A stretch of DNA of 64,000 nt from assembly GCA_002269645.1 (NCBI GenBank), contig NIVC01000646.1, forward strand, positions 62,001 through 126,000, in the 5' to 3' direction. The translations under genes were made by a program, and so were the position numbers. Under the pieces are notes generated by a model. The model had not been told where the DNA came from. It worked only from the letters and a program-made list of their open reading frames with translations, and did not search any database. Positions within the stretch are counted from its first letter, which is position 1, and every line of letters starts with the position of its first letter. This DNA is from Macrostomum lignano (taxonomy: Eukaryota). Below are positions 1 through 57,123 of this stretch, piece by piece.

Positions 1-2828
1 AAGTTTTCGGGTTTGCACGCTTCAGTAATAGATGTGTGTGGCCCGAGGTAAGTGAGTCTGGCCCGCGTGAAGGCGGGACAGATGCTGACGAAATGCTCAG
101 CGGTTTCGTCACCTGAGTTGCAGAAACTACAGGTGGCGTTGGTGGCGTTGCCCTGCAGGTACTGGTGCCTGGAGAAGCAGCCGTGACCAGAGAGGGTCAT
201 GGTGGCAGCCCGGATGTCTCTGCGCGAGAGGCGCAAGAGGAGCTTCCGGAGCTGGTGAGAGGGCTGAGGGACAGCGCCTCTGGATTGCCTGCAGTTCGTG
301 CGGTTCGCCCAAGTCGAGCGGTGCTGAGTCCTGATCCACGCTTTGATGCGCGAGTCGATGACACAGCCAGGGATCGGGACAAGAGGTTCGGGGCCGAGAG
401 AGGAGCCGGAGGCACCAACTTTTGCAAGGGTGTCAGCCAACTCATTTCCTCGGATCCCCACATGCCCCGGAACCCACTTAAGGGTAATTTTGTTGGCGGA
501 ACCCAACACATTGAGGAGTTTGATACAGTCAAGGACTGTAGCAGAGTTGGTGCTGCAGCCACTGATGGCGTGCAAGGCAGCTTGGCTGTCCGAATGGAAA
601 ATGATGTTCTTACCAGTAACGCCAGTGGCGAGAAGCTCTGCAGTGCAGGAGCTGATGGCCAGAACTTCATTTTGGAAAACACTGGAGTTGACCCCAGTGT
701 ATTGAGCGTGGGTAGCGATGACCCTCCCGTTCAGAAAGATTCCAACACCAAAGCCGGTGTTGGCTGACTGCTTAGAACCGTCGGTGTAGCAATGAAGCTC
801 ACCAGGGTTCCAATGGTCATTGATGTTATCGCGCGAGTCGATAGCTACGGAGTAGCGCTGTCTCAGGTTGAGCGTTGAGGCAATGCCATCGGTGAAGACG
901 CGATTGGCCTGACACTCGTTGAGAAAGTTGAGGCACAGATCGCTATGCGGGACAAGGTTCCGCTTAGCAGGTGCTCTCATGTAAATGAATTTGACGCCGG
1001 CATCAATTAGACGCCGCGTCGTTCTAGCCGCCTCACCCCTGATGAAGAGGTCAAGAGGCGGAAGATTAAGAAAGGCCCCCATGCCAGCAAAGGGCGTGGA
1101 CCTGGTGGCGTTGCAGATGAGCCTACACGCTCTGCCTTGGATCGTGTTGAGCAGGTCTGCATGGCTTTTGACCTGGGTAGCGCTAACCCAGACAACAGAG
1201 GCGTACGTAATGGCAGGTCTAACTACGGAAGTATAGATCCACCAAAGCCGCTTTGGGGATAGACCCCAAGAAGTGCCAAGTGCTCGTCGGAGCTGGGCCA
1301 GGATGGCTGAGGCACGCTTAGCTTTTGCTTTCACGTGGAAGGACCAGTTGAGCCGGTGGTCAAGTGTGACCCCGAGACATCTGGTCTGGTGCGCGAAGGC
1401 AATATCTCTGCCGTAGAGCTGCAGAGGACGTATGTTCCAGCGTAGTCTGCTGGTAAACATAATGGCAACGGTTTTGGGCTCAGAGAGTTCCAAACCATTG
1501 TCATTGGCCCAGGATTCTGCTTTGCGGATAAAGCTCTGCATCAGATCCCTGAGCGTGCTGGGAGACGGTCCTGCCACAATGGCCGTGACGTCATCAGCAT
1601 ATCCGACTTTGAAGACGGGGTCAGGTCGGGAGTCACTCAGAAGAGCGTCCATGACCAGGTTCCAGAGCGTCGGGGTGAGGACTCCGCCTTGGGGTCCACC
1701 CTTACAGACTCTGGTGGAGGCAGTTTGCCCAAGAAGTTGGGCAGTGACCGTACGGTTGGAGATCATGTACATGATCCACCGTATGAGGGTAGCATGAGCT
1801 TTGCGATTTTGAAGGGCCCTCTGAAACGCTTCAAAGATAACGTTGTCGAAGGCGCCAACAATGTCAAGAAAGAGAGCCAGGGCGTAACCGTCACCCAGTA
1901 CCGCCCGTTCAATCTTTTCGACAATCGCATGCAGGGCGCTGTCAGTCGACCTCCCGGTACGGAAGGCGTGCTGATTATTGCTGAGGGGCATCGCTGTCAG
2001 CTCGCAGGAGAGCAGCCGCCAGAGAATAAGCCTCTCAGTGAGCTTAAGCATTGCTGACGTTAAGCTAATTGGCCGGAAGGCCTTGACGCTTTGGTAGTCA
2101 CCCTTCCCAGGTTTGGGAATAAAGACTACTCGAGCTTCAGTCCAGCTTTTGGGAACGTATCCCAGCTGGATAGAGGCCCGCATAAGATTGCGGGTGAGTC
2201 TCAGGAACGAGGGTATCTTGGCTGCTTCACGAAGGAGAACAGGGTAGATACCATCAGGTCCAGGAGATTTGAAGGGTTTGAAGGTTCTGACCGCACGAGC
2301 GATTAGGTCTTCAGTGACAATGCCCGCCGCTAGGGTGGCTCCATCCATCGAATGGTTGGGCTCCGGTCTAGCAGTAGGTACCCTCGGGAAGAATGTGCTA
2401 AGCATATGCTGAAGCACTTCTTCAGGGTCTTTAGTAAGAGAGCCATCATCTTTTTTTATCATGGCTAATTTGGACATTTTGTCCATTGTAAGGGCCTTGA
2501 CAAGCCTAGAAGTAGGTCTGTCTTGATCCAATTCATTGCAGAATTGGCGCCACTTACATTCCTTGGCCTTGCGCACTTCAGATTTGAAATTGCGGGAGGC
2601 TTGCCGGAAAAGCTCCATGTCCTCCGGGTTTCCGGTCTTCATGGCACGGCGATGAAGGCTTTTGGCCTTCCGCCTGAGTTTCCCCAGCTCCGGGTTCCAC
2701 CACGGCGCCGAGGTCTTGCCTCTGTAGGCGCGAGCAGGACAAGCCGCTTCGTAGGCTGCAATAATGCAACCTGTCAGCGTCTCAGCCATATGATCCAGTG
2801 ACCAGTCGCATTCGACTGCATTGGGTCC
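1..2828 (-). mobile_element. 5'-truncated non-LTR retrotransposon (R1/Loa-like, I group) ORF2 with RT, RNase H and C-terminal CCHC; runs off the left window edge
   Basis: Motifs sampled on the minus strand all fall in one frame: PWWNPEL (~2700), LFLDIVGAFDN (~1865), PQGGVLTPTLWN (~1690), GYADD (Y codon at 1601), RNase H VFTDG (~899), and TCSFCNSGDETAEHFVSICP (~134). An upstream in-frame TAG is at 2831-2829 and the first Met is at 2789. No endonuclease domain is present. It is probably absent from the ORF track because no stop falls inside the window. Confidence 0.92.
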
Positions 2829-5663: not shown

Positions 5664-7400
5664 CTGACTGACTGACTGACTGACTGACTGACTGACTGAC
5701 TGACTGACTGACTGACTCACTGACTGTCTGACTGACTGACTGACTGACTGACTGACTCACTGACTGTCTGACTGACTGACTGACTGACTGACTGACTGAC
5801 TGGCTGACTGACTGACTGACTCACTGACTGTCTGACTGACTGACTGACTGACTGACTGACTGACTGACTGACTGGCTGACTGACTGACTGACTCACTGAC
5901 TGTCTGACTGACTGACTGACTGACTGACTGACTGACTGACTGGCTGACTGACTGACTCACTGACTGTCTGACTGACTGACTGACTGACTCACTGACTGTC
6001 TGACTGACTGACTGACTGACTGACTGACTGACTGACTGACTGACTGACTGACTGGCTGACTGACTGGCTGACTGACTGACTGACTGACTGACTGACTGAC
6101 TGACTGGCTGACTGACTGACTGACTCACTGACTGTCTGACTGACTGACTGACTGACTGGCTGACTGACTGACTGACTCACTGACTGTCTGACTGACTGAC
6201 TGACTGACTGACTGACTGACTGACTGACTGGCTGACTGACTGACTCACTGACTGTCTGACTGACTGACTGACTGACTCACTGACTGTCTGACTGACTGAC
6301 TGACTGACTGACTGACTGACTGACTGACTGACTGACTGACTGGCTGACTGACTGGCTGACTGACTGACTGACTGACTGACTGACTGACTGACTGGCTGAC
6401 TGACTGACTGACTCACTGACTGTCTGACTGACTGACTGACTGACTGACTGACTGACTGACTGACTGGCTGACTGTCTGACTGACTGACTGACTGTCTGAC
6501 TGACTGACTCACTGGCTGACTGACTGACTGACTGACTGGCTGACTGACTGACTGGCTGACTGACTGACTGACTGACTGACTGACTGGCTGGCTGACTGAC
6601 TGACTCACTGACTGTCTGACTGACTGACTGACTGACTGACTGACTGACTGGCTGACTGACTGACTCACTGACTGTCTGACTGACTGACTGACTGACTGAC
6701 TGACTGACTGACTGGCTGACTGGCTGACTCACTGACTCACTGACTCACTGACTTGATTTGATTTGACTCTTTGATTTGACCTGATTTGACTCTCTGACTG
6801 ACTGACTGACTGGCTGACTCACTGACTCACTGACTGTCTGACTGACTGACTGACTGACTGACTGGCTGGCTGACTGACTGACTGACTGACTGGCTGACTG
6901 ACTGACTGGCTGACTGACTGACTGACTGACTGACTGACTGACTGACTGACTGACTGACTGACTCACTGGCTGACTGACTGACTGACTGACTGGCTGACTG
7001 ACTGACTGGCTGACTGACTGACTGACTGACTGACTGACTGACTGACTGGCTGGCTGACTCACTGACTCACTGACTGGCTGACTGACTGACTGACTGACTG
7101 GCTGACTGACTGACTGGCTGACTGACTGACTGACTGACTGACTGACTGACTGACTCACTGACTGACTGACTGACTCACTGACTGACTGACTGACTCACTG
7201 ACTGACTGACTGGCTGACTCATTGACTCACTGACTCACTGACTCACTGACTGACTGACTTGACTGTCTGACTGGCTGACTCACTGACTGACTGGCTGACT
7301 CACTGACTGACTGACTGGCTGACTGGCTGACTCACTGACTGACTGACTGACTCACTGACTGACTGGCTGACTCATTGACTCACTCATTGACTCATTGACT
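5664..7400. repeat. (GACT)n microsatellite with CACT/GTCT/GGCT variants, about 1.74 kb, in STARD10 intron 4
   Basis: Direct reading. Confidence 0.98.
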
Positions 7401-19030: not shown

Positions 19031-19928
19031 ATGAAAGTGTCATTTAAAAAATTAAGAAGCATCATGGTAGAATAAAAGAAGCGTCATGTCAGACATGAAG
19101 GGTGTCATGTAAAAATTAAATGCAGCTATAATGCTGTGCTGGGGAGAAAAACTGAGACGTAAAGGCTCTCAGAGAATAACTGAGATTACGGGGGGGGGGG
19201 TTCTGAGATGTCAAAGCAAAAGTCAGAAGCTACTTCAAAGTTCATGTACTTTACTCAATTTTTTTATTGCATTATTTGTTGGCTCGCCACGGGGGGGCGC
19301 TGATAGAAGAAGAGTCATGTAAAAAATAAAAGTAGCACTACGTATACATAAAAGAAAAGTCATGTCGAAGTTAAAAGATTCATTTGGGAATTGCTACGAT
19401 GTCAAAGCTTGGTGGAAATCGTTATAGTGCTGTGATTCTTAAAGAAGGAATCACTAAAATGTCAAGGCTTAGGGGAGAAGAATTGCTGAGATTTCAAGGC
19501 TTTAGGTTGGGTTAAAGTTAGGTTTAGGTCAGGTGTGGGTTGAGGGTTATATTTTATCGGATTTCAAGGTTAACAGAATAACAGGGGATTTTTTAGATTT
19601 CAAGGTTTATGGGGCCATCGCTGACATGTTAAGACTTACGGGGGGAATATCTGAGATGTCAAGGTTCACGGGGGTATAAATGAGATTTCAAGGCTAAAGT
19701 CAGAAGCTACATGTAGTTTATTGAAAACTTTTTATTACATTATTTGATGCCTCCTCTGGGGAGGGATCGCTGATAAAAAAGCGTAATGTAAAAAATAAAA
19801 TAAGCTTCATGTCGAAGTTAAGAGATTCATTTGGGAATCTCTACGATGTCGAGGCTTGCAGGGAATCGCTATAATGCTGTAGTAGTGCTATAATGACTCT
19901 TAGAGAGAATTACTGAAATTTCAATGCT

Positions 19929-19990: not shown

Positions 19991-20404
19991 AAGGTTGACA
20001 GATATTTTTAGATTTCCAAGGCTTATTTGGGGCATTGCTGAGATGTCAAGGGGGGAAGTTGATATGTTAAAGCTTGTGGGGGGGGGGGAATTACTGACAT
20101 GTCAAGGCTTACAAGGTTTGACAGGAGATTTTTTAAGATTTCAAGGATACATGTAGTTTATTAAAAAAACGTGTATTGCATTTCTTTGGCTCCCCAACGG
20201 GGGGCGTAGATTGCTAGTAACGTACTAAGTACTTAAACTTCAGACGAAAACTAGTTTCATTTTTTAAAGCTTTTTCAGGCAAAATTCAGTTTAAAACAAT
20301 CATAAAGAATATTTACGAGTTTTAAGCATAAAAGATTAACATGAATCGTAATGAGGTTTAAATAAGTGAAGAAACAAAACACTTAGAATTGCTGGGGTGC
20401 AGTA

Positions 20405-22008
20405 CAGCAGCATGGAGAAGGGACAGAGCAGACACAGCAGCATGGGGAGGGCACAGAGCAGACACAGCAGCATGGGGAGGGCACAGAGCAGACACAGCTG
20501 CATGGGGAGGGACAGAGCAGACACAGCAGCATGGGGAGGGCACAGAGCAGACACAGCTGCATGGGGAGGGGACAGAGCAGACACAGCAGCATGGGGAGGG
20601 GACAGAGCAGACACAGCAGCATGGAGAAGGGACAGAGCAGACACAGCATGGGGAGGGGACAGAGCAGACACAGCATGGGGAGGGCACAGAGCAGACACAG
20701 CAGCATGGGGAGGGGACAGAGCAGACACAGCATGGGGAGGGGACAGAGCAGACACAGCTGCATGGGGAGGGGACAGAGCAGACACAGCAGCATGGGGAGG
20801 GGACAGAGCAGACACAGCAGCATGGAGAAGGGACAGAGCAGACACAGCTGCATGGGGAGGGCACAGAGCAGACAGCAGCATGGGGAGGGCACAGAGCAGA
20901 CACAGCAGCATGAGGAGGGGACAGAGCAGACACAGCATGGGGAGGGCACAGAGCAGACACAGCAGCATGGGGAGGGGACAGAGCAGACACAGCATGGGGA
21001 GGGGACAGAGCAGACACAGCATGGGGAGGGCACAGAGCAGACACAGCAGCATGGGAGGGGACAGAGCAGACACAGCATGGGGAGGGCACAGAGCAGACAC
21101 AGCAGCATGGGGAGGGGACAGAGCAGACACAGCATGGGGAGGGGACAGAGCAGACACAGCATGGGGAGGGCACAGAGCAGACACAGCAGCATGGGGAGGG
21201 GACAGAGCAGACACAGCATGGGGAGGGCACAGAGCAGACACAGCAGCATGGGGAGGGGACAGAGCAGACACAGCATGGGGAGGGCACAGAGCAGACACAG
21301 CAGCATGGGGAGGGGACAGAGGAGACACAGCTGCATGGGGAGGGGACAGAGCAGACACAGCAGCATGGGGAGGGGACAGAGCAGACACAGCTGCATGGGG
21401 AGGGGACAGAGCAGACACAGCTGCATGGGGAGGGGACACAGCAGACACAGCAGCATGGGGAGGGCACAGAGCAGACAGCAGCATGGGGAGGGCACAGAGC
21501 AGACACAGCAGCATGGGGAGGGGACAGAGCAGACACAGCATGGGGAGGGCACAGAGCAGACACAGCAGCATGGGGAGGGGACAGAGCAGACACAGCTGCA
21601 TGGGGAGGGGACAGAGCAGACACAGCAGCATGGGGAGGGGACAGAGCAGACACAGCAGCATGGGGAGGGCACATAGCAGACAGCAGCATGGGGAGGGCAC
21701 AGAGCAGACACAGCAGCATGGGGAGGGGACAGAGCAGACACAGCTGCATGGGGAGGGGACAGAGCAGACACAGCAGCATGGGGAGGGGACAGAGCAGACA
21801 CAGCAGCATGGGGAGGGCACAGAGCAGACAGCAGCATGGGGAGGGCACAGAGCAGACACAGCAGCATGGGGAGGGGACAGAGCAGCAGCAGACACAGCAG
21901 CATGGGGAGGGGACAGAGCAGACACAGCAGCATGGGGAGGGGACAGAGCAGACACAGCTGCATGGGGAGGGGACAGAGCAGCAGCAGACACAGCAGCATG
22001 GGGAGGGG
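20405..22008. repeat. 27/30-bp minisatellite (CATGGGGAGGGGACAGAGCAGACACAGCAG), left part of the array split by the LINE
   Basis: Direct reading. The same unit resumes at 26770. Confidence 0.97.
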
Positions 22009-22075
22009 TGGGCAATGGGACCGCTTTCTCGTAGCGCCCCCGAGCACATGGATCCCCCATGTGGCGAAGTGTCCC
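22005..22075 (+). ncRNA. HDV-like self-cleaving ribozyme at the 5' end of the LINE
   Basis: P2 GGGAC(C)/(G)u-GUCCC; P3 GCU/AGC; L3 UUCUCGU; P1.1 UC/GA; P4 CACAUGG/CCAUGUG; G-G pair flanking P4; J4/2 C22065-GAA; P1 3' strand GCCCCC pairing with GGGGU (22005-22009). Confidence 0.8.
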
Positions 22076-25000
22076 TCCTTCCCCGGACAGCACGTACGAA
22101 GAGCAACGATTACGACAACGGCCCACCCGATCAGCGGGAAAGCGGGAACCTCGATCACGTCCTCCGCCTACGGGGCGGCAGCGACCCCCCGTCTAAAGGA
22201 AGCAGACACGGCAACCGTCGCAACAGGCGCCATGCTAAAGCACTGGAAGAGCTCCTTATCCTACAGTTCAACTGTAACGGCATTAGAGCCAGGACTCCGG
22301 AACTAACCAGGTGGCTGGATACGCATCGCCCTGCGGCAGTCCTTCTGCAAGAGACAAAACTAACGCCGGACACGAGCTACACCGCCCCGAGCGGCTATAG
22401 TGTAGCAGCCCGTGCCGACGGCAGCAACAAAATTGACATTTTCCCAGGCTCAGACGCCACCGAGAGCGCAACAGAAACTGCCACCGCCACCCGGCCATTC
22501 CAGCCCGGCGCCACGTGCACCGCCCGCACTTTCCCGCGAAGGCCACGGTGCCGTCTACGCTGGCCTGATGACAGAACTGACTGGTGTAAAGGCTGCAGAT
22601 CATCCCGATCGGCTTGCACCCGGCGCAATGAGCCATGGCCAGACGCGAAGGCCCAAATCGGCGCGGACAACCACAATAAAACCCAAAAAAATAACAACGC
22701 GCAATCCGGACCTGACCGCCACACGGCCACGACGCAACCAAACGATACAACCGGAGCGACGTCGGGACCCCTCGGCAAAAACACCACTGAAAAGCCGAAA
22801 AACATAAACTTGCAACCCGGTCTCGACACCGCCTCCACATGGCTGTGCGCAGCCTGCAACAATATCATTACCAAACGCCAGACTAGCCTCCGCTGCAACC
22901 AGTGCTGGAACTGGCTACACCTGAAATGTAGCGGCCTCAAGCGCAGTAAAGACTGGAACGACGAATACATCGGAAGCTGCTGCTCGACACCACAAGATGC
23001 GAGCCGATCCAGCACACCGTCAACATTGCCCAAGTCTACACCTAAAGATCCAGTAACGGTCAGACCAGCCAACCCGTCGACCCCACCGCAACGCCGCTCC
23101 AAGAGAGCCGGTCGGGGAGGCGCCCTCATCATGGTCAGAAACGATATCAACTTCACCACCCTGCCCGACCAATCCAAAGCCGCACTTGATATTGCTGCGT
23201 GCACTCTCCACCTCAAAGGTCAAGGCGACCTCAACATCGCCAGTGTGTACGCTGCCCCTCACAGTAGCCAACGCCAACATGAAGCCTGGACTCCGGATCT
23301 CTCTTGTATACCGATAACGGGCAACACCGTCATAGGCGGAGATTTCAATTGTCACGGTTACTGGGACCCTTTCCAGCCCGGAGACAACAGGGGCGCCGAA
23401 CTGGAAACCTGGGCGAGTAATAACAACCTCAACATCTGCAACACCAGGAACTCTGCGACAAGACTCAACCCAGCGACGGGAGGCAATTCGGCACCGGACT
23501 GCACCTTGGCCCGAGGCCGTCCGAGCGCAGTTGTTTGCAGAACCTGGTCCACCGCTAAAGATCTGGGCTCCGATCATCTGCCTATCACCTTCTGCGTGCA
23601 AGCGCGTCGCCCTCATCGACAACAACGACAAGCGCAGTGGTCGTACAAGAAGGCGAATTGGCATATATTTAAAGAGACCCTTCAAAATCATGTCCAGGAC
23701 GCGGCGGAATCCCCCGAAGCAGAACACAAACGTATCTGCAAAGCCATACTGCAAGCCGCCGCAGCAGCTATCCCGAAGGGAGCCCGGAACGGCGCGCAGA
23801 ACATTTCGAGACCTTTCTGGAATGACGAATGCGACACAGCGCTACACAGAAATCAGCAAGCCCGCAAAAATGTCGAAACAGATGCATCCGACACAAACAT
23901 GCAGGAACTCACGCAAGCGCGCACGTGCCTTCGCAATACCATTCACAACGCCAAAAAAGAATTCTGGTCGGAAACGTGTAAAGACATGAAGCTAGACACC
24001 AATCTCTACAGGACCCTCCGCAACATGAGAGGCGAAGCCAAACCACAAGCATCCAGCTCCACCATTAGTTATACCAACCCAACTTCTGGTAGGACTAAAG
24101 TGGCTATCACTAAAAAGAATAAGGCCGACCTCTTCATGCAAATTTACGCTAAAGAATCCCGGCTAGATAAGGGAGACAACGACGAGGCTATAGTGAAAGA
24201 GGCTAACCGCATCCTCCGCAACTGCAGAGCTACCGCCACCAACCACGGCCCGGAATCAGACTTTACTATCGGCGAATTCCGTCACATAATCCGCAGACTT
24301 AAATCCGGTAAATGCCCTGGCCCTGACCAGGTCAGCAATGAGATGTTGAAACAGCTCCCCCTGGCCATGGAGCTTCAGATCCTCAACCTTCTGAACAGAG
24401 TCTGGAAGGGTGACCAAGTCCCCACCGAATGGCGAAGAGCCACTATCATACCGATTCTTAAAAAGGACAAATCGCCAAGCTCACCGTCCTCGTACCGACC
24501 TATTGCCCTTACGAGCTCCATCTGCAAGGTCGGAGAGAAACTCGTACAGCAAAGACTTAACGCTTACCTCGAACGTGAACACAAACTGGCCCCAGAGCAG
24601 GCGGGCTTTCGCCAGGGCAGGAGCACCGAAGAGGTCCTCGCCCACACCTGCCAATCGATTTTTGATGGTTTTGAGGAACAACCAGCGAAACGCTCTGCCA
24701 TATGCCTACTCGACTTCAGCAAGGCCTATGACAGAGTATGGCGCGCTGCTCTGACTGTTAAGCTATACGAGCTCACGGTACCTGCTAGATTCATCCTCTG
24801 GGTGCACAAATTCCTCAGAGACCGCCGCGCCAGGGTGAAATGGCAACAAACTATCAGCAGGGAAAGAGTCCTCGAGGAGGGCCTTCCACAAGGAAGCGTC
24901 ATCGCCCCCACCCTGTGGACTACGTACGTCAACGACCTGCCGACGACCATAAAAAGGGCTAGCCCTGATTGTAAAATTAACCTATACGCCGACGACAGCT

Positions 25001-26559
25001 CACTGCTAGCCACCAGCAGGAAGCTAACGGACTGCGCCGACATCCTGCAACCAGCCATTGATGCGGCCGCCGAATGGTGTAAGCGGTGGAAGGTCACCCT
25101 CAGCACCGAGAAATGCATCTACTCGACCTTCACTCTCTCGCCACAAGAGAACAACGGCAAAGTCCGACTCAACCTGCACATTAACGGAGCCGAACTTAAA
25201 TACGATCCGCACCCTCGACTCCTAGGCCTGACCCTTGACGATCAGCTAACCTTCAACAAGCATGGAGCCGAGGTAAAGGCCCGCATGGCCCGGCGCAGAG
25301 GCGCACTCACGGCCATTGCCCACCGCAACAGTGGAGCGGACCAAAACATCCTCCGCTTGGCCTATATCACCACTATCAGAGCGTGTGCAGACTACGGAAG
25401 CGGTATATGGCTAACCGGAGCAGCGCCTAGCACGCGACGCATGATCGAACAACAGCAGTCGATATGCGCGCGGATGATCACAGGCTGCTGCAGTACTACC
25501 CGCAACGAGACCACGCTCAACATCGCCAGGCTCCCCCCGATCGGCTCGATCGCCATAGAACGCGCGGCAATGCTTCGCGAGCGCATTCTTCGTCTCCCGC
25601 CGGACTGCCCGGCAGTGGATACCGCCGCCCGCTCGACGAGACCCCGCCTAAAAAATCGAAGCTATGACCCGCAAGACGAACCGGGAAGCGGAATAGGAGC
25701 CCGAGACCGCGAACGGCCACACCGCGGATGCTGGAGGAGGGCCGCACGAGAACTCCCTGTTGTAGCAACGCTCGATGAAATGGCGCGCGAGCAGATCATC
25801 ATCGCCGCCCCCTGGGAAAGCGACACCAGCGCGGAAGTTATCTTCGACACAACGGCGAGTATGGTCAACCGCAAAGCCCCGGCAGAAGAACGCGCCAGAG
25901 CGGCCGACGCGGTCCTCAGAGCGGCCCAAGAGCTCGAGATCACGGCCTGGACGGACGGCTCCGCCAACGAAGGCTGCACCCACGGAGGGGGAGCGGCCGT
26001 GATCCACTATAATGGTACCACCACTGAGCACCTAGCACCGGCCGGGACATACTGCAGCAGCTACCAAGCAGAAATGACTGCTATCGCAACCGCCCTTCGT
26101 GCCTCGTTGGAGCTACACGCCGCCGCCAACAGTATAGCCATCCTCACTGACAGCCTCAGCGCCCTGTCGGCACTGGCCCGCGGCCCGGCCGGCCAGCGTA
26201 ATGCTGCCGGGCACGCCTGCTGGGACACCATCGCGAGAGCCACCTACTCCAAGGTCTACTTCGGATGGGTACCTGGCCACTGCCAGATTGCCGGCAACGA
26301 AGCGGCTGACAGAGCGGCGGCTACGGCAGCTACCCTTCCGCAGAGCGAAGCTGCCATCACGTTAGACTCCGCGAGGGCCGCTATCCGCCGCGATCGCCGA
26401 CGCCGCGACGCAGAGCCTACCAACCAGCCGTCACCCACCGACACCACCCGCAATCGACGCGAGCAGGTGTTGGTTAATCAACTCAGAGCGGGCGTCTCCA
26501 CCATCTGCGCCGCCACCCGCCAACGTCTTGGTCTCCAAGAGGACAAAAAAGTGGAGTGA
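22015..26559 (+). CDS. LINE polyprotein: leader ending in LRLRGG, APE endonuclease with PHD insertion, reverse transcriptase, RNase H. The terminal CCHC lies in a shifted frame ending at 26722.
   Basis: APE motifs QFNCNG, LQETK, GGDFN and GSDHLPI; RT motifs LLDFSKAYD, PQGSVIAP and YADD (24985-24996); RNase H motifs WTDGS, YQAEMTAI, TDSLS and WVPGH..GNEAAD. The ORF-track start at 21688 is read-through from the minisatellite; the first element ATG is at 22015. Confidence 0.92.
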   Translation: MGPLSRSAPEHMDPPCGEVSLLPRTARTKSNDYDNGPPDQRESGNLDHVLRLRGGSDPPSKGSRHGNRRNRRHAKALEELLILQFNCNGIRARTPELTRWLDTHRPAAVLLQETKLTPDTSYTAPSGYSVAARADGSNKIDIFPGSDATESATETATATRPFQPGATCTARTFPRRPRCRLRWPDDRTDWCKGCRSSRSACTRRNEPWPDAKAQIGADNHNKTQKNNNAQSGPDRHTATTQPNDTTGATSGPLGKNTTEKPKNINLQPGLDTASTWLCAACNNIITKRQTSLRCNQCWNWLHLKCSGLKRSKDWNDEYIGSCCSTPQDASRSSTPSTLPKSTPKDPVTVRPANPSTPPQRRSKRAGRGGALIMVRNDINFTTLPDQSKAALDIAACTLHLKGQGDLNIASVYAAPHSSQRQHEAWTPDLSCIPITGNTVIGGDFNCHGYWDPFQPGDNRGAELETWASNNNLNICNTRNSATRLNPATGGNSAPDCTLARGRPSAVVCRTWSTAKDLGSDHLPITFCVQARRPHRQQRQAQWSYKKANWHIFKETLQNHVQDAAESPEAEHKRICKAILQAAAAAIPKGARNGAQNISRPFWNDECDTALHRNQQARKNVETDASDTNMQELTQARTCLRNTIHNAKKEFWSETCKDMKLDTNLYRTLRNMRGEAKPQASSSTISYTNPTSGRTKVAITKKNKADLFMQIYAKESRLDKGDNDEAIVKEANRILRNCRATATNHGPESDFTIGEFRHIIRRLKSGKCPGPDQVSNEMLKQLPLAMELQILNLLNRVWKGDQVPTEWRRATIIPILKKDKSPSSPSSYRPIALTSSICKVGEKLVQQRLNAYLEREHKLAPEQAGFRQGRSTEEVLAHTCQSIFDGFEEQPAKRSAICLLDFSKAYDRVWRAALTVKLYELTVPARFILWVHKFLRDRRARVKWQQTISRERVLEEGLPQGSVIAPTLWTTYVNDLPTTIKRASPDCKINLYADDSSLLATSRKLTDCADILQPAIDAAAEWCKRWKVTLSTEKCIYSTFTLSPQENNGKVRLNLHINGAELKYDPHPRLLGLTLDDQLTFNKHGAEVKARMARRRGALTAIAHRNSGADQNILRLAYITTIRACADYGSGIWLTGAAPSTRRMIEQQQSICARMITGCCSTTRNETTLNIARLPPIGSIAIERAAMLRERILRLPPDCPAVDTAARSTRPRLKNRSYDPQDEPGSGIGARDRERPHRGCWRRAARELPVVATLDEMAREQIIIAAPWESDTSAEVIFDTTASMVNRKAPAEERARAADAVLRAAQELEITAWTDGSANEGCTHGGGAAVIHYNGTTTEHLAPAGTYCSSYQAEMTAIATALRASLELHAAANSIAILTDSLSALSALARGPAGQRNAAGHACWDTIARATYSKVYFGWVPGHCQIAGNEAADRAAATAATLPQSEAAITLDSARAAIRRDRRRRDAEPTNQPSPTDTTRNRREQVLVNQLRAGVSTICAATRQRLGLQEDKKVE

Positions 26560-26769
26560 CTGCGGCGCGGTGGACACGGCCGACCACCTCCTCCGCCGCT
26601 GCCCAAGAGGTGACGCCGCCAGAGCCCGCTACTTCGGCGTCGAGGACCCCCTATCGGCGCCGACAGGCCGGATCATCGCGTTCGTACGTGCTGTGGGGCG
26701 CCTGAGCCCCCGCCAATATTGACGCCGAAGCGTCAACGGCGTGCCGGGAAACAGAAGAAGAAGAAGAAG

Positions 26770-27337
26770 CATGGGGAGGGGACAGAGCAGACACAGCAGC
26801 ATGGGGAGGGGACAGAGCAGACACAGCATGGGGAGGGGACAGAGCAGACACAGCATGGGGAGGGCACAGAGCAGACACAGCAGCATGGGGAGGGGACAGA
26901 GCAGACACAGCATGGGGAGGGGACAGAGCAGACACAGCTGCATGGGGAGGGGACAGAGCAGACACAGCAGCATGGGGAGGGGACAGAGCAGACACAGCAG
27001 CATGGAGAAGGGACAGAGCAGACACAGCTGCATGGGGAGGGGACAGAGCAGACACAGCATGGGGAGGGCACAGAGCAGACACAGCAGCATGGGGAGGGGA
27101 CAGAGCAGACACAGCAGCATGGGGATGGGACAGAGCAGACACAGCAGCATGGGGAGGGGACAGAGCAGACACAGCAGCATGGGGAGGGGACAGAGCAGAC
27201 ACAGCAGCATGGGGAGGGGACAGAGCAGACACAGCAGCATGGGGAGGGGACAGAGCAGACACAGCAGCATGGGGAGGGGACAGAGCAGACACAGCCCCAT
27301 GGAGAAGGGACAGAGCAGACACAGCATGGGGAGGGAA
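26770..27337. repeat. 27/30-bp minisatellite, right part of the split array
   Basis: Direct reading. It ends about 40 bp from the STARD10 exon 3 donor. Confidence 0.97.
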
Positions 27338-51544: not shown

Positions 51545-51796
51545 TCATAGCCGCAGTAGGTAACTCAATCTCAAGTAGTTCTCAGTGCTGTTCTCCGTGC
51601 TTGCTGTATCAGTTATGCAATAGCCCTCATTAGGAAATGTGAATTTTATTGTCCTCAACATCCTTTGAGCAGCAGTCCTTCTTTCTGATGAAAATGAGGG
51701 AGCCAAAGTGCTCCGGCTTTCTGGAATGGTGGCGAATGTTTCTGGGTTTGAGTCGGTGGTCTGTCGGCAGATGTCGCTTCCAGCTCCTTTTTCTGG
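51545..51796 (-). CDS. tentative 3' part of the exon interrupted by the RTE insertion (unknown protein)
   Basis: After removing the insertion and one TSD copy, the frame from 53028 continues for about 80 codons (GAGSDICRQTTDSNPETF...) to TGA at 51547-51545. Confidence 0.4.
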   Translation of the reverse strand, partial: PEKGAGSDICRQTTDSNPETFATIPESRSTLAPSFSSERRTAAQRMLRTIKFTFPNEGYCITDTASTENSTENYLRLSYLLRL

Positions 51797-52999
51797 TCAT
51801 TTCAGCATTTCATCATTTCATCATTTCATCATTTCATCAATGGTCACGCTGATCATTGTCTTCGTTGACTTTCGAAAGGCGTTCGACTCGGTGTTGAGAG
51901 CCGCGCTTCCCTTTGTCCTTCGAGCCTACCGGGGACCCCAGCAGCTAATAGACGCAGTCATGGCGCTGTATTGCGATACTCGAGCTGCTGTGGTGACGGC
52001 GGACGGCCTGTCTGACCTGTTCGATACTTCATCAGGAGTTCTGCAGGGCGACACGCTAGCGCCGTTCCTCTTCGTGCTGCTGCTGGACTGGGTGCTTCGG
52101 ACCGCTCTCCCCTCGGCTTACGACGGCTTCCTGCTGCGCAGACGCATCGGTCGACGCCACGGCGAAAAGCGCCTAAGCGTGCTTGGCTACGCCGACGACC
52201 TCGCCCTCCTGTCCTCGTCCGTTGAAGGCGCCCAGCGCCAGATCGACAGGCTGGTCGAGGCGGCATCGAGCGTCGGTCTGATTGTCGACACGCTGAAGAC
52301 CGAGGTGCTGACTGTGCCGGCCGACATCCCAGCGGACCTGACGTGCCGCGGCGCAGACGGGCAGACGACCAGGCTCGCACGCTGCCAGCGGTTCACCTAC
52401 CTCGGCGGTCTGGTGCCCCACGTGGAAGAGGACCTCCGACGGCGCAGAGGACTTGCCTGGGCGGCCTTTCGTTCGATCCGAGCCGTCCTCCAGTCCGAAG
52501 CGCTGCCCGACCGCCAGAGGGCTCGGCTGTGGCAGGCGGTGGTCGAAACCGTCCTGCTATACAACGCCGAGACGTGGACACTGACGGCTACGCTGGAGCG
52601 GCAGCTGGACTCGGCGCACTCAGGGCTGCTCCGTGCGGCCTTTCGAGCTGACGAGAGCGTCGGGACCGAGGCCCTGTACGATCGGGCCAAGCTGCAGCGC
52701 CCGTCCATCAGTCTGCGCCGGCGGCGACTTCAACTGGCGGGCCACGTGATCCGGGCCGAGGGCTACTGCCCCCCAACCTGTTCAGGACGTCCTGCTGCTT
52801 ATCTTGCGGGGTCCGTTCAGGCGGGGTCAGGCCCGAACCCGTCGATACGTGGACTGCCTGCTGTACGACGCTGGGGCGCCCGACACTGCCAACAGAGCAG
52901 ACTTTGTTCGCTCCCAGGCTCTGCGGCGCGCCATCTGACGCGCCCTGCTCTAACTGTGACTGTGCATGCGGGGTCGCGTATTTTGTTGTTGTTGTTGTT
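51797..52999 (+). mobile_element. 5'-truncated RTE-type LINE (RT domain to 3' end) with a (TTG)n tail and a candidate 9-bp TSD
   Basis: Motifs FVDFRKAFDSV, GVLQGDTLAPFLF and LGYADDLALL. A frameshift in a C-run near 52770 is followed by an alternate frame ending at TGA 52936-52938. TTG tail at 52981-52999. TTTTTCTGG occurs at both 51788-51796 and 53000-53008. Confidence 0.88.
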
Positions 53000-53028
53000 T
53001 TTTTCTGGACAGGTGAGCTTGGCCTTAC
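53000..53028 (-). CDS. tentative 5' part of the interrupted exon (unknown protein)
   Basis: Acceptor TTTCAG|GT AAG GCC AAG CTC ACC TGT CCA GAA AAA is phase-compatible with the donor at 53140. Confidence 0.4.
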
Positions 53029-53140
53029 CTGAAATTTATTGAAAGAGCAGCTCAATGTACTGAAGAGATGTTAAAACTGGACCAGATGTTGCTCTAATTG
53101 GTCAATTATAAGGGACTCAACCCAACCAAAACTGACTCAC

Positions 53141-55890: not shown

Positions 55891-55978
55891 GGACAGACAG
55901 ACAGACAGACGGACAGACAGACAGACACTAAGACAGACAGACACTAAGACAGACAGACAGACACTAAGACAGACAGAC

Positions 55979-56025
<47 letters not shown>

Positions 56026-56032
56026 CAGACAC

Positions 56033-56067
<35 letters not shown>

Positions 56068-56068
56068 G
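55718..56068. repeat. (AGAC)n microsatellite filling almost the whole intron
   Basis: Direct reading. Confidence 0.97.
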
Positions 56069-56077
56069 CATCCTCAC

Positions 56078-57123
56078 CTGCTCTGCGGAGTCCAGTCGCA
56101 GGGTGGCCAGGGTGCAGTGCAGCATCTCCGGCGGGATGCAGCAGGAGGCGAAGGCGGGCTGCTGCCGGACGATGCTGGCCTGCACGGCGGCAGCGGCGGA
56201 GGCGACGGCCGGATCGACAACCCGGACGCAGACAAAGAAATTTGGGCGCAGCAGGTCGCGCCAGTAGACCTTGGCGGTGCCGGAAAGTTGGGCCTGGTCC
56301 TCGCCTTCGCTCAGACTGTCGCCGTCATCGCCGCACCGCTGAGCTGCGGACTCGACGACGCGCCGGTCGAGCCGCACCTGGACGCCGTCGTCGTCAGATT
56401 CATCAGATTGGTCGGATTCGTCAGCCTCCGAGTTTGAGGACGACGCGGCCGAGGCCATGGACGCCTCGCCGTCCGGATAGTCCTCGTCCCGGTAGTTGGC
56501 GATGAGCTTGTAGATGTCGGCGCCTTCAGCGACATCGTCGGCAGTGGCCGTGGAGCCGAACACCAGGTCAAGCCGGCGCCGCTTGTCCCAGATGACCGCG
56601 CGCCTGTACTTGAAGTAGCAAATCCGGTGCCGGGGGATCACGAACGTGTAATAGTCGACGCTGGCAATGTCCTCCCAGCTGAATTCGTCGAATTGTTTTT
56701 CAACTACGCCTTTGAACCTGTCCAGATAGCCGATGAAGATGTCCTGGGCCGGAATGCCCTCGTCCCATTGGATTCGCTTCAAGACATCGTCGGCGGTTTT
56801 CATTGGCTTCAGTTTGGCCTTAAAACTGGCCGCCTGCTTGGACTCGTCGGCTGCGGCGGCCGCGGCGGCTCGCCGGCGTCGCTTGGTGCGGGCGGACTCG
56901 TAGCGACGCTGGCGGGACGGCGGGGCGGCCGCCTGCTTGCTGTTGGAGACTTCCGCGGCTTCATTCACAGCTGACAGAGCAGCAGTTCCCGCAGGGAAGG
57001 CGGCAGCGGCCAGCTGTTGCAGCATGGCTCGGCCGCGCAGCGAGTTGGCCAGTGTGGCCAGTTCAGCTTCCGTAGCTGGGGCGGAGCGGACCGACACGCA
57101 GGGCGGCTCCAACGGGTATTGGT
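56078..57123 (-). CDS. RWD-MJ1316-2H protein (LENG9-like), exon 2: RWD C-terminal half, MJ1316 domain, first half of 2H
   Basis: QYPLEPPCVSVRS (RWD YPxxxP); MKTADDVLKRIQWD..IGYLDRFKG..IPRHRICYFKY...IWDKRRRLDLVFGS (MJ1316/DUF504); RPNFFVCVRV...LHCTLATL (first HxT). Donor CAG|GTGAGG. An alternative in-frame acceptor lies at 57153. Confidence 0.88.

What the first reader, a model, noticed from the sequence alone, without database searches (positions are those of the whole stretch)
22132..22182. Ubiquitin C-terminus mimic (QRESGNLDHVLRLRGG) as a putative host-DUB cleavage signal ahead of the endonuclease
The short leader ends in QRESGNLDHVLRLRGG|S, closely matching the ubiquitin C-terminus QKESTLHLVLRLRGG (LRLRGG at 22162-22179), about 25 residues before the APE domain. 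There is no room for a full ubiquitin fold upstream: about 49 aa from ATG 22015, partly encoded by the ribozyme. Host deubiquitinases cleave after LRLRGG in ubiquitin fusions. Related APE-type elements are known to carry 2A-like peptides at an equivalent position to release the enzyme from a leader. The inference is a ribozyme plus DUB-site module that gives the polyprotein a defined N-terminus whatever upstream frame or start is used; here the frame is open from inside the minisatellite at 21688. Novelty could not be verified without a literature or Repbase search.
Basis: partly seen in the sequence, partly recalled or inferred. Interest (0 to 1): 0.85.

Follow-up and report, generated by a model that had tools for sequence, protein, structure and literature searches.

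The report
Ubiquitin-tail cleavage motif in a LINE
A jumping gene (LINE) in this window carries, just before its first enzyme domain, the last 11-13 residues of ubiquitin; its few close relatives keep them and sister elements carry a 2A "skipping" peptide at that place, so it probably lets a host ubiquitin-tail protease cut off a throw-away leader, which is not yet tested.

Summary
Window 22132-22182 (+) encodes QRESGNLDHVLRLRGG|S. It lies 55 aa after the first element ATG (22015) and about 27 aa before the APE domain of a near-intact LINE (22009-26769: APE, RT, RNase H).

The motif is not chance. The only close relatives found have N-L-x-x-V-[LM]-R-L-R-G-G at the same position: P0001, Macrostomum lignano P0019/P0173, and Logan contig P0169. 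The motif has 8 of 11 invariant columns, against 1 of 24 upstream and 3 of 28 downstream, and the invariant residues use different synonymous codons.

Profile comparison matches only ubiquitin residues 64-76. No ubiquitin fold is detected, and the leaders are otherwise unrelated.

Of 106 relatives with a recognisable APE start, 50 carry a 2A (NPGP) peptide upstream, including sister lineages with the same split APE. The RLRGG clade nests among them and has no NPGP.

An HDV-like ribozyme at 22008-22075 is supported by position and by covarying helices in two sister elements. Rfam does not detect it.

Best reading: a leader-release site cut by a fold-independent host protease, with ZUFSP/ZUP1-type enzymes as the candidate. 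Cleavage is inferred, not shown. This is a new variant of the known ribozyme + 2A + APE module.

The parts
21997..22008 (.). Left target-site duplication CATGGGGAGGGG, inside the 30-bp minisatellite
   Evidence: The same 12-mer directly follows the 3' tail at 26770-26781. The minisatellite unit is interrupted exactly here.
22008..22075 (+). Candidate HDV-like self-cleaving ribozyme. P1 is 22008-13/22036-41 (one U.C mismatch). J1/2 is AAU. P2 is 22017-21/22071-75. P3 is 22023-25/22033-35 with L3 UUCUCGU. P1.1 is 22027-28/22042-43. P4 is 22045-51/22057-63. J4/2 is GCGAA with the putative catalytic C at 22065.
   Evidence: Manual fold checked by script. The same nested architecture, with different and compensating P1/P2/P3/P4 sequences, sits at the ORF start of sister elements L007 and L009. 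My loose descriptor hits exactly at the element's 5' end. Rfam gives no hit, and the descriptor alone is not specific: about 3 loci per shuffled window.
22015..22179 (+). 55-aa leader (Met1 to Gly55). About the first 20 codons overlap the ribozyme.
   Evidence: Leaders of the four family members are unalignable apart from the terminal motif.
22147..22179 (+). Conserved ubiquitin-tail motif NLDHVLRLRGG. The predicted scissile bond lies between Gly55 (22177-22179) and Ser56 (22180-22182).
   Evidence: 8 of 11 columns are invariant in window/P0001/P0019, against 1/24 upstream and 3/28 downstream. hhalign against ubiquitin/NEDD8 aligns Ub 64-76 with E = 7.6e-5. Synonymous codon differences are seen between the window, L012 and L001.
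22180..22251 (+). Arg-rich linker between GG and APE (SDPPSKGSRHGNRRNRRHAKALEE). It contains no in-frame Met.
   Evidence: An equivalent basic stretch follows RLRGG in P0001 and P0173, and follows NPGP in P0164 and P0165.
22252..22422 (+). APE endonuclease, N-terminal part (LLILQFNCNG...QETKL...ARADG)
   Evidence: Pfam Exo_endo_phos at aa 83-128. 28 of 57 columns are invariant across the family.
22423..23109 (+). About 230-aa insertion splitting the APE domain. It holds a Cys4 knuckle CRLRWPx5WCxGCRSxRxAC (22549-22617) and a PHD-like finger (22840-22983).
   Evidence: The Cys knuckle is shared with P0001, P0173, P0016, P0018, P0022, P0027 and P0168.
23110..23592 (+). APE endonuclease, C-terminal part
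   Evidence: Pfam Exo_endo_phos_2 at aa 407-524, E = 8e-14.
24457..25125 (+). Reverse transcriptase domain
   Evidence: Pfam RVT_1 at aa 815-1037, E = 2e-34.
25939..26331 (+). RNase H domain
   Evidence: Pfam RNase_H at aa 1309-1439, E = 2e-11.
26558..26605 (+). C-terminal Cys/His knuckle (DCGAVDTADHLLRRC), now in a shifted frame after a frameshift near the A6 run at about 26545-26555
   Evidence: Three-frame translation compared with the C-terminus of P0001, VCPDCGARDTEQHILFDC.
26753..26769 (+). 3' tail, (GAA)n
26770..26781 (.). Right target-site duplication CATGGGGAGGGG

Best explanation
The element at 22009-26769 is a single-ORF APE-type LINE. Its 5' end has the same layout as the L1Tc-type module, which is a 5' HDV-like ribozyme, an in-frame leader-release signal, and then APE-RT-RNase H. 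The difference is that the release signal here is not a 2A peptide but the last 11-13 residues of ubiquitin (NLxxV[LM]RLRGG).

Proposed mechanism:
1. (Inferred, with structural support.) The ribozyme cuts the co-transcript at about 22007/22008.
2. (Inferred.) Translation starts at AUG 22015, inside the ribozyme. This makes a 55-aa leader whose sequence is dictated partly by RNA structure and is not conserved.
3. (Inferred, not shown.) A host cysteine protease that recognises the ubiquitin tail without needing the ubiquitin fold cuts after Gly55. ZUFSP/ZUP1-type enzymes are the best candidate, and UCH-type enzymes a weak one.
4. The cut releases an ORF protein that begins at Ser56 with an Arg-rich stretch followed by APE.

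The same cut would free the protein from any host peptide in read-through fusions, such as the M. lignano copy that is fused in frame to a zinc-finger gene.
For: Conservation:
- The motif is invariant at 8 of 11 positions in three lineages only 41-49% identical to one another. The flanking leader is 1/24 and 3/28 invariant.
- It is also present in P0169.
- The invariant L, V, R, L, R and G residues are encoded by different synonymous codons in the window, L012 and L001. This points to selection on the peptide rather than on the RNA.

Position:
- GG lies 26-32 aa before the APE start in all full members.
- Sister elements with the same Cys-knuckle split APE carry NPGP 46-50 aa before APE, followed by a similar basic stretch (P0164, P0165).
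- 50 of 106 relatives have NPGP upstream, and none of the RLRGG members does.
- The RLRGG members form a clade nested among elements with 2A and PHD.

Other support:
- There is no Met between GG and APE, so the motif is always translated.
- The residue after GG is S, D, N or G, and never Pro.
- Pfam finds no protease domain in the window ORF, P0001, P0015 or P0173.
- The match to ubiquitin is specific to the tail: hhalign covers Ub 64-76 with E = 7.6e-5.
- ZUFSP-family DUBs cleave RLRGG-AMC faster than Ub-AMC. They hold the R-x-R motif by two salt bridges and apparently accept N-terminally truncated ubiquitin (PMC8776766).
- There is precedent for the module. L1Tc has an HDV-like ribozyme plus 2A in frame before APE (PMC5814959), and 2A sits in the N-terminal region of ORF2p in many clades (PMC3708506).
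Against: - No cleavage data exist.
- Most DUB classes require a folded S1 ubiquitin, and their activity on RLRGG peptides is orders of magnitude lower (PMC8776766).
- No ubiquitin fold is present. Pfam finds none at E <= 10, hhalign matches the tail only, and a single-sequence AF2 model has pLDDT 52 with no beta-grasp, which is weak evidence.
- The family is tiny: the window plus three other lineages. P0001 lacks the RT core, L012 is decayed after about 8961, and L001 lacks the N-terminal part of APE.
- The window ribozyme has a U.C mismatch in a 6-bp P1 and no Rfam hit, so its activity is uncertain.
- If the ribozyme and AUG 22015 are used, it is not obvious why a 55-aa leader has to be removed.
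Confidence: 0.5

Rival explanations
1. The motif is conserved for a function that involves no cleavage. With the Arg-rich stretch after it, it could be part of a nuclear or nucleolar targeting signal or of an RGG-type RNA-binding segment. It could also be a docking site that binds ubiquitin-tail readers or DUBs without being cut.
For: RLRGG is followed by an Arg-rich segment in every member. Most DUBs would not cut it without the fold.
Against: Conservation extends to the hydrophobic N-L-x-x-V-[LM], exactly as in ubiquitin 66-71. That is not expected of RGG boxes or NLSs. The Arg-rich stretch itself is not conserved in sequence (3/28). The ZnF-UBP readers described in the papers I saw bind the free ubiquitin C-terminus/diglycine (paper abstracts listed). 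The equivalent position in relatives holds a known separation signal.
Confidence: 0.17
2. The site is cleaved, but not by a housekeeping host DUB. The enzyme would be a papain-like, OTU or Josephin protease supplied in trans by another mobile element or a virus in the same genome.
For: LINE ORF2 proteins fused to Josephin or OTU DUB domains have been reported in Haematococcus and Symbiodinium (PMC13405545). From general knowledge, viral papain-like proteases cut after LxGG.
Against: No protease domain was found in this element or its relatives. Dependence on a second element would be fragile for an autonomous LINE. Nothing of the kind was seen in the window.
Confidence: 0.1
3. The motif is a decayed 2A peptide. 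It would be the remnant of the helix upstream of NPGP, kept for a ribosome-tunnel or translation-rate effect or simply not yet eroded, and its likeness to ubiquitin would be coincidence.
For: hhalign aligns NLxxVmRLRGGx with AHLA-LLLLRAGD of the sister 2A peptides in the same register, E = 0.006. The P0164 2A reads LIRLRAGD, and P0026 PAHLARMLLMRAGD has identical spacing.
Against: All four members have lost D[VI]ExNPGP completely, yet they keep V[LM]RLRGG exactly, with synonymous codon turnover. The match to ubiquitin is stronger than the match to 2A: score 27 against 16, probability 62% against 6%. From established 2A biology cited in PMC3708506, the upstream helix alone is inactive for skipping.
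Confidence: 0.08
4. Chance resemblance with no function.
For: The motif is short. One unrelated RLRGG occurs inside the APE of P0157.
Against: Four occurrences at the same position in diverged elements, as the only conserved island in the leader. 0 of 100 shuffles matched.
Confidence: 0.03

Closest known systems
L1Tc / ingi-type LINEs of trypanosomes (HDV-like ribozyme L1TcRz/Pr77 + L1Tc2A + AP-RT-RH-NAC)
   Same: Single ORF with APE, RT, RNase H and a C-terminal Cys/His motif. There is a self-cleaving HDV-like ribozyme at the very 5' end of the RNA. A short in-frame signal just upstream of APE separates a leader from the enzymes (PMC5814959). A trypanosomatid (Novymonas) element is among the RT-level hits (P0005).
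   Different: The separation signal here is a ubiquitin tail (RLRGG) with no NPGP, so the mechanism would be post-translational proteolysis rather than ribosomal skipping. The APE is split by a Cys knuckle and a PHD-like finger. Clade membership by RT phylogeny was not tested.
2A-bearing APE-type LINEs of metazoans (Rex1, Crack, L2, CR1, Ingi clades; Odon et al. 2013)
   Same: Signal in the N-terminal region of ORF2p. A PHD finger is often present. These are mostly single-ORF elements (PMC3708506). The nearest relatives recovered here are of this type.
   Different: Those carry D(V/I)ExNPGP. The RLRGG clade does not, and its PHD-like finger sits inside the APE instead of between the signal and APE.
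Natural linear ubiquitin/UBL fusion precursors (polyubiquitin, Ub-RPL40, Ub-RPS27a, FUBI-S30)
   Same: A downstream protein is released by host-protease cleavage directly after ...LRLRGG. PMC10296562 and PMC10611586 were listed; I read their abstracts only.
   Different: Those carry the whole 76-aa beta-grasp fold, which most DUBs require. Here only residues 64-76 are mimicked.
ZUFSP/ZUP1 deubiquitinases acting on RLRGG peptides
   Same: This enzyme class has the specificity the model needs. It has high activity on the bare RLRGG pentapeptide, its R-x-R recognition matches the invariant R-L-R-G-G, and it is present in animals, plants and fungi (PMC8776766).
   Different: No natural linear substrate of this kind is described in that paper. 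Whether ZUP1 cuts a peptide bond to Ser/Asp/Asn/Gly in a protein context was not addressed there.
LINE ORF2 proteins fused to DUB domains (Josephin, OTU)
   Same: This is a link between LINEs and ubiquitin-type proteolysis (PMC13405545).
   Different: Those elements carry the enzyme together with 2A. This one carries only a putative substrate site and no protease.

Membership tests
APE-type non-LTR retrotransposon (LINE) | APE endonuclease and reverse transcriptase in one ORF | tested here: met
   Pfam Exo_endo_phos/Exo_endo_phos_2 and RVT_1, E = 2e-34.
APE-type non-LTR retrotransposon (LINE) | Target-site duplication and a simple-repeat or A-rich 3' tail, with no LTRs | tested here: met
   12-bp TSD CATGGGGAGGGG at 21997-22008 and 26770-26781. 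(GAA)n tail at 26753-26769.
L1Tc/ingi-type 5' module | HDV-like ribozyme at the 5' end of the element RNA | tested here: inconclusive
   A nested double-pseudoknot fold sits exactly at the 5' junction, and helices covary in L007 and L009. There is no Rfam hit, P1 has a mismatch, and self-cleavage is untested.
L1Tc/ingi-type 5' module | Functional 2A (DxExNPGP) in frame upstream of APE | tested here: not met
   No NPGP in the leader of the window element, P0001 or P0173.
L1Tc/ingi-type 5' module | RNase H domain and C-terminal zinc-finger motif after RT | tested here: met
   RNase_H, E = 2e-11. The Cys/His knuckle is in a shifted frame.
Ingi clade (by RT phylogeny) | RT domain groups with Ingi/L1Tc reference elements | not tested
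   No reference LINE set was available. The only hint is a Novymonas hit at E = 5e-23.
Ubiquitin / ubiquitin-like domain | Beta-grasp fold of about 70-76 aa detectable by profile | tested here: not met
   Pfam finds no ubiquitin family at E <= 10 in four leaders. hhalign aligns only 13 columns, Ub 64-76. The leaders are not alignable to each other. The AF2 model has low confidence and no strands.
Ubiquitin / ubiquitin-like domain | C-terminal LRLRGG tail | tested here: met
   VLRLRGG at 22159-22179. The family consensus is V[LM]RLRGG.
2A / StopGo peptide | D(V/I)ExNPGP at the C-terminal end of a helical segment | tested here: not met
   Absent in all RLRGG members. There is only weak similarity to the upstream helix (E = 0.006, probability 6%).
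HDV-like ribozyme | P1-P2-P3-P1.1-P4 nested double pseudoknot with a catalytic C in a CNRA J4/2 | tested here: met
   Helices verified by script. J4/2 is GCGAA and L3 is UUCUCGU. The descriptor hits 22008-22075.
HDV-like ribozyme | Match to a curated covariance model | tested here: not met
   No HDV-type Rfam family at E <= 10 on 21960-22200, nor on L001, L007 and L009 at E <= 5.
HDV-like ribozyme | Self-cleavage 5' of P1 | not testable with these tools
   Needs in vitro transcription.
Linear DUB substrate | RLRGG followed by a non-proline residue | tested here: met
   The P1' residue is S, N, D or G in the four members.
Linear DUB substrate | Cleavage after GG by a deubiquitinase | not testable with these tools
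   Biochemical assay required.

The most novel reading that the evidence does not exclude
The RLRGG site arose in place from the 2A peptide of an ancestral element by one or two substitutions. Sister 2A peptides read ...LIRLRAGD(I)ELNPGP, and A->G gives RLRGGD, which is what the M. lignano copy has. That change would have switched leader release from co-translational ribosome skipping to post-translational cutting by a fold-independent host DUB (ZUP1 type), after which NPGP decayed. If so, this would be a natural case of a mobile element using a bare ubiquitin tail, without the ubiquitin fold, as a processing signal. It would also give ZUFSP-type enzymes a natural linear substrate.
Probability: 0.25. 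Interest if true: 0.8.

Novelty: new variant of a known kind. Interest (0 to 1): 0.64.

Why it matters
LINEs that ride on host transcripts need a clean 5' RNA end and a clean protein N-terminus. The known answers are a 5' HDV-like ribozyme and a 2A skipping peptide. This family appears to keep the ribozyme but to replace 2A with the ubiquitin C-terminal tail.

If the tail is cut, three things would follow:
- As far as I could find, it would be the first retrotransposon shown to borrow the host deubiquitinase system for polyprotein processing.
- It would do so with a 5-11 residue tail rather than a ubiquitin domain, which conflicts with the rule that DUBs need folded ubiquitin. It would therefore point to ZUFSP/ZUP1-type enzymes, whose preference for bare RLRGG that paper leaves mechanistically unexplained (PMC8776766).
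- It would give a short, genetically encodable, post-translational alternative to 2A tags.

It also offers a concrete case of one release mechanism turning into another through a one-residue intermediate.

Full-text searches found no paper describing a ubiquitin-tail motif in a non-LTR element. The library is incomplete and Repbase could not be searched.

Tried and rejected
- Rfam searches for HDV-type ribozymes in the window, L001, L007, L009 and L012 gave only noise hits.
- Plain MFE folding of 22001-22100 is not better than shuffles (z = -0.84). This is expected for a pseudoknot.
- My own loose HDV descriptor is not specific. It finds 6 loci in the window against about 3 in shuffles. The ribozyme claim therefore rests on position and covariation, not on the descriptor.
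- MAFFT misaligned the three ribozymes, so helices were checked by script instead of with the count of structure pairs.
- Pfam found no ubiquitin domain in any leader.
- The single-sequence AF2 model of aa 1-135 was uninformative (pLDDT 52).
- The metagenome-contig scan returned only distant 2A-PHD-APE elements.
- The third word-based protein search, using the M. lignano N-terminus, found no further members.
- The M. lignano 5' end (L012 about 6843-6960) and the region upstream of L001 do not fit the same ribozyme model. Whether the RLRGG clade in general keeps the ribozyme is open.
- The idea that P0169 keeps more of ubiquitin (KLIYDGGE against RLIFAGKQ) was not borne out by hhalign.
- The source organism of the window could not be identified.
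Full report
**1. What is there**

Window 22132-22182 (+) encodes QRESGNLDHVLRLRGGS inside a 1623-aa ORF, 21688..26559. The DNA for VLRLRGG (22159-22179) occurs once in the window, and 0 of 100 shuffles matched it.

The ORF belongs to a non-LTR retrotransposon. Pfam finds four features:
- an APE endonuclease in two parts (aa 83-128 and 407-524, counted from ATG 22015);
- RVT_1 at aa 815-1037, E = 2e-34;
- RNase H at aa 1309-1439;
- a weak C1/PHD-like finger.

The element spans 22009-26769. It interrupts a 30-bp minisatellite (20404-22008 and 26768-27326). It is flanked by a 12-bp target-site duplication, CATGGGGAGGGG, and ends in (GAA)n. Its GC content is 58%, against 36-37% in the flanks.

The copy is almost intact. 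The only defect seen is a frameshift near an A6 run at about 26545-26555, which puts the C-terminal Cys/His knuckle out of frame.

The leader from Met (22015) to Gly55 (22179) is 55 aa. An Arg-rich 24-aa linker follows, and then APE.

**2. Is the ubiquitin likeness real and more than chance?**

BLASTP of the leader against ubiquitin gives 11/16 identities, pairwise E = 0.001. The stronger argument is comparative.

An exhaustive HMMER search with aa 1-560, two word-based searches and a cluster look-up recovered the only close relatives:
- P0001 (UniParc/MetaClust): ...ENLLSVMRLRGG|NSD
- P0019/P0173 (Macrostomum lignano): ...ANLHRVLRLRGG|DSN
- P0169 (Logan contig L001): ...HNLLHVMRLRGG|GAG

In the full members GG lies 26-32 aa before the QFNCNG start of APE.

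In the three-way alignment A2, invariant columns are distributed as follows:

| Region | Invariant columns |
|---|---|
| Leader upstream of the motif | 1 of 24 |
| Motif | 8 of 11 |
| Between GG and APE | 3 of 28 |
| APE N-terminal part | 28 of 57 |

The invariant residues are encoded differently in the three available DNAs:
- Arg: CGC, CGT, CGG
- Arg: CGG, CGC, AGA
- Leu: CTA, CTA, TTA
- Gly: GGC, GGA, GGG

. The constraint is therefore on the peptide.

A second LRLRGG at 19183 is a G-run directly behind a stop codon and is chance.

**3. Tail only, not a ubiquitin domain**

- Pfam finds no ubiquitin family in any of the four leaders, even at E <= 10.
- The four leaders cannot be aligned apart from the motif.
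- A profile-profile comparison with ubiquitin/NEDD8 aligns 13 columns only, Ub 64-76 (probability 62%, E = 7.6e-5).
- A single-sequence AlphaFold model is low-confidence and shows no strands. This is weak evidence.
- Position 69 of ubiquitin, a buried Leu, is H, R or S here. That fits a free tail rather than a beta-5 strand in a fold; this last point is inference.

**4. What sits at this place in relatives**

Among 106 relatives with a recognisable APE start, 50 have an NPGP-type 2A peptide upstream. Only the four RLRGG proteins have xRGG there, and none of these has NPGP.

The sister lineages from TARA and JGI metagenomes share the unusual APE split by a WCxGC Cys knuckle. They carry 2A 46-50 aa before APE, followed by a similar basic stretch:
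- P0164: ...AHLALIRLRAGDIELNPGP
- P0165: ...LLILRAGDVEENPGP

.

A neighbour-joining tree of the APE C-terminal half places window + P0001 + P0173 in one clade, together with the N-terminally truncated P0015. That clade is nested among elements bearing 2A and PHD. This is a rough tree without support values.

The literature agrees. 2A peptides occupy the N-terminal region of ORF2p in the Rex1, Crack, L2, CR1 and Ingi clades, sometimes with a PHD finger between 2A and APE (PMC3708506). L1Tc combines a 5' HDV-like ribozyme with a 2A before AP-RT-RH (PMC5814959). Neither paper mentions ubiquitin.

**5. The ribozyme**

Rfam gives nothing. However, 22008-22075 folds into the HDV topology:
- P1: GUGGGC/GCCCCC, with one U.C mismatch
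- J1/2: AAU
- P2: GGGAC/GUCCC
- P3: GCU/AGC
- L3: UUCUCGU
- P1.1: UC/GA
- P4: CACAUGG/CCAUGUG
- J4/2: GCGAA, with the putative catalytic C at 22065

L3 and J4/2 resemble those of genomic HDV. That comparison is from my own knowledge.

Two sister elements have the same architecture at the same place relative to their ATG, with different, compensating helices:

| Helix | L007 | L009 |
|---|---|---|
| P1 | UGCCGA/UCGGUG | GGACGA/UCGGUG (3 standard pairs + 1 G.U wobble, 2 mismatches) |
| P2 | GGAGGC/GCCUCC | GGAGGC/GCCUCC |
| P3 | UCC/GGG | CCCC/GGGG |
| P4 | CCCCUCC/GGAGGGG | UCCCCC/GGGGGA |

A loose descriptor I wrote hits 22008-22075, L007 1799-1866 and L009 35-105. It also hits upstream of the 2A of L003 and L006. 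It yields about 3 chance loci per shuffled window, so the weight lies in the exact 5'-terminal position and in the covariation.

The ORF's ATG lies in J1/2-P2 in all three elements. About the first 20 codons of the leader are therefore fixed by RNA structure.

The M. lignano 5' end and the region upstream of L001 do not fit this model.

**6. Mechanism**

Shown:
- a conserved ubiquitin-tail peptide at the site where relatives have a protein-separation signal;
- no Met between it and APE;
- no protease domain in the family;
- a residue after GG that is never Pro.

Inferred: after ribozyme processing and initiation at AUG 22015, a host protease cuts after Gly55 and frees the Arg-rich N-terminus of the APE-RT-RNase H protein.

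The main objection is that most DUBs need folded ubiquitin. The ZUFSP/ZUP1 family is an exception. It cleaves RLRGG-AMC faster than Ub-AMC, holds R72 and R74 by salt bridges, and seems to accept truncated ubiquitin. UCHL3 and PLpro act far more weakly on such peptides (PMC8776766). The invariant R-L-R-G-G fits that specificity.

In M. lignano, the annotated protein P0173 fuses the element in frame to a Q-rich C2H2 zinc-finger gene whose uninterrupted paralogue is P0172. This shows the kind of read-through product from which such a site would free the enzyme. That copy is decayed, and the fusion may be only a gene-model artefact.

I put the cleavage-site model at about 0.5. The rivals are:
- a non-cleaved role for the motif (0.17);
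- cleavage by a protease supplied in trans by another element, given that LINEs with Josephin/OTU domains exist (PMC13405545) (0.1);
- a 2A relic (0.08);
- chance (0.03).

**7. Origin**

There are two routes.
- Capture of a ubiquitin 3' coding end.
- In-place conversion of a 2A helix. hhalign aligns NLxxVmRLRGGx with AHLA-LLLLRAGD in the same register (E = 0.006, probability 6%). P0026 (PAHLARMLLMRAGD) has identical spacing, and P0164 (LIRLRAGD) is one A->G change from the RLRGGD of M. lignano.

The ubiquitin match is the stronger of the two. The evidence does not decide between the routes. Convergence on the DUB specificity starting from a 2A helix would explain both similarities.

**8. Novelty and verdict**

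Full-text searches found no description of a ubiquitin-tail motif in a non-LTR element. Repbase could not be searched.

The finding is a real, conserved feature. I class it as a new variant of a known kind, namely the ribozyme + release-signal + APE module of L1Tc-type and 2A-bearing LINEs. It is not a ubiquitin domain and not a 2A.

Its limits are the small family (four lineages, two or three of them defective copies) and the absence of any biochemical evidence. Interest: 0.64.

Noticed in passing
window 22423-23109: The APE domain is split by an insertion of about 230 aa. It carries a Cys4 knuckle, CRLRWPx5WCxGCRSxRxAC (22549-22617), which is shared with P0001, P0173, P0016, P0018, P0022, P0027 and P0168. 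It also carries a PHD-like finger (22840-22983), which in 2A-bearing relatives lies between 2A and APE instead.
   Followed up: partly
window 20404-22008 and 26768-27326: The element sits inside a 30-bp minisatellite with a 12-bp TSD. The 5' flanks of the M. lignano copy (L012) and of L001 are also CAG/CAA-rich. This could be a target preference or coincidence.
   Followed up: no
window 22009-26769 vs flanks: Element GC is 58%, against 36-37% in the flanking 5 kb on each side. The whole window is packed with long micro- and minisatellites: 36 TRF rows, including arrays of over 800 bp of (GATA)n, (TATC)n and CTGA.
   Followed up: no
window 26545-26605: A single frameshift at an A6 run separates the C-terminal Cys/His knuckle from the ORF. 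It could be a real mutation or a homopolymer assembly error.
   Followed up: partly
window 408-2765 (-) and 51708-53042 (+): There are two further LINE fragments. One covers RT to RNase H at 24% identity to the main element. The other is an RT-only ORF (RVT_1, E = 5e-15). Neither has an N-terminal region in the window.
   Followed up: partly
L012 6836-7104 (M. lignano NIVC01000089.1): The family copy is annotated as an in-frame fusion to a Q-rich C2H2 zinc-finger gene (P0173; uninterrupted paralogue P0172). Its 5' end starts TGGGACCG, like window 22016-22023, but it lacks the upstream P1 strand and has a different 50-nt structured stretch before P4.
   Followed up: partly
P0001 and P0015 (proteins): Both closest relatives lack the RT core. 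APE is followed by RNase H after about 400-480 aa, against 785 aa in the window element. They may be internally deleted, non-autonomous derivatives.
   Followed up: no
L001 440-465: In the defective Logan copy, the sequence after the Cys knuckle reads TAETNPGP where the window has TRRNEPWP. This is an NPGP without the D[VI]E context and is probably chance.
   Followed up: no
L003 2131-2198, L006 1635-1702: The HDV-like descriptor also hits about 130 nt upstream of the 2A peptide of distant 2A-PHD-APE elements from metagenomes. This suggests that the ribozyme + 2A pairing is widespread in this group.
   Followed up: partly
window 55964-57112 (-): An intron-less ORF with MJ1316 (RNA cyclic-end recognition, E = 2.5e-24) and AKAP7 2'5' RNA ligase-like domains. 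It is the only clear host-type gene seen in the window.
   Followed up: no
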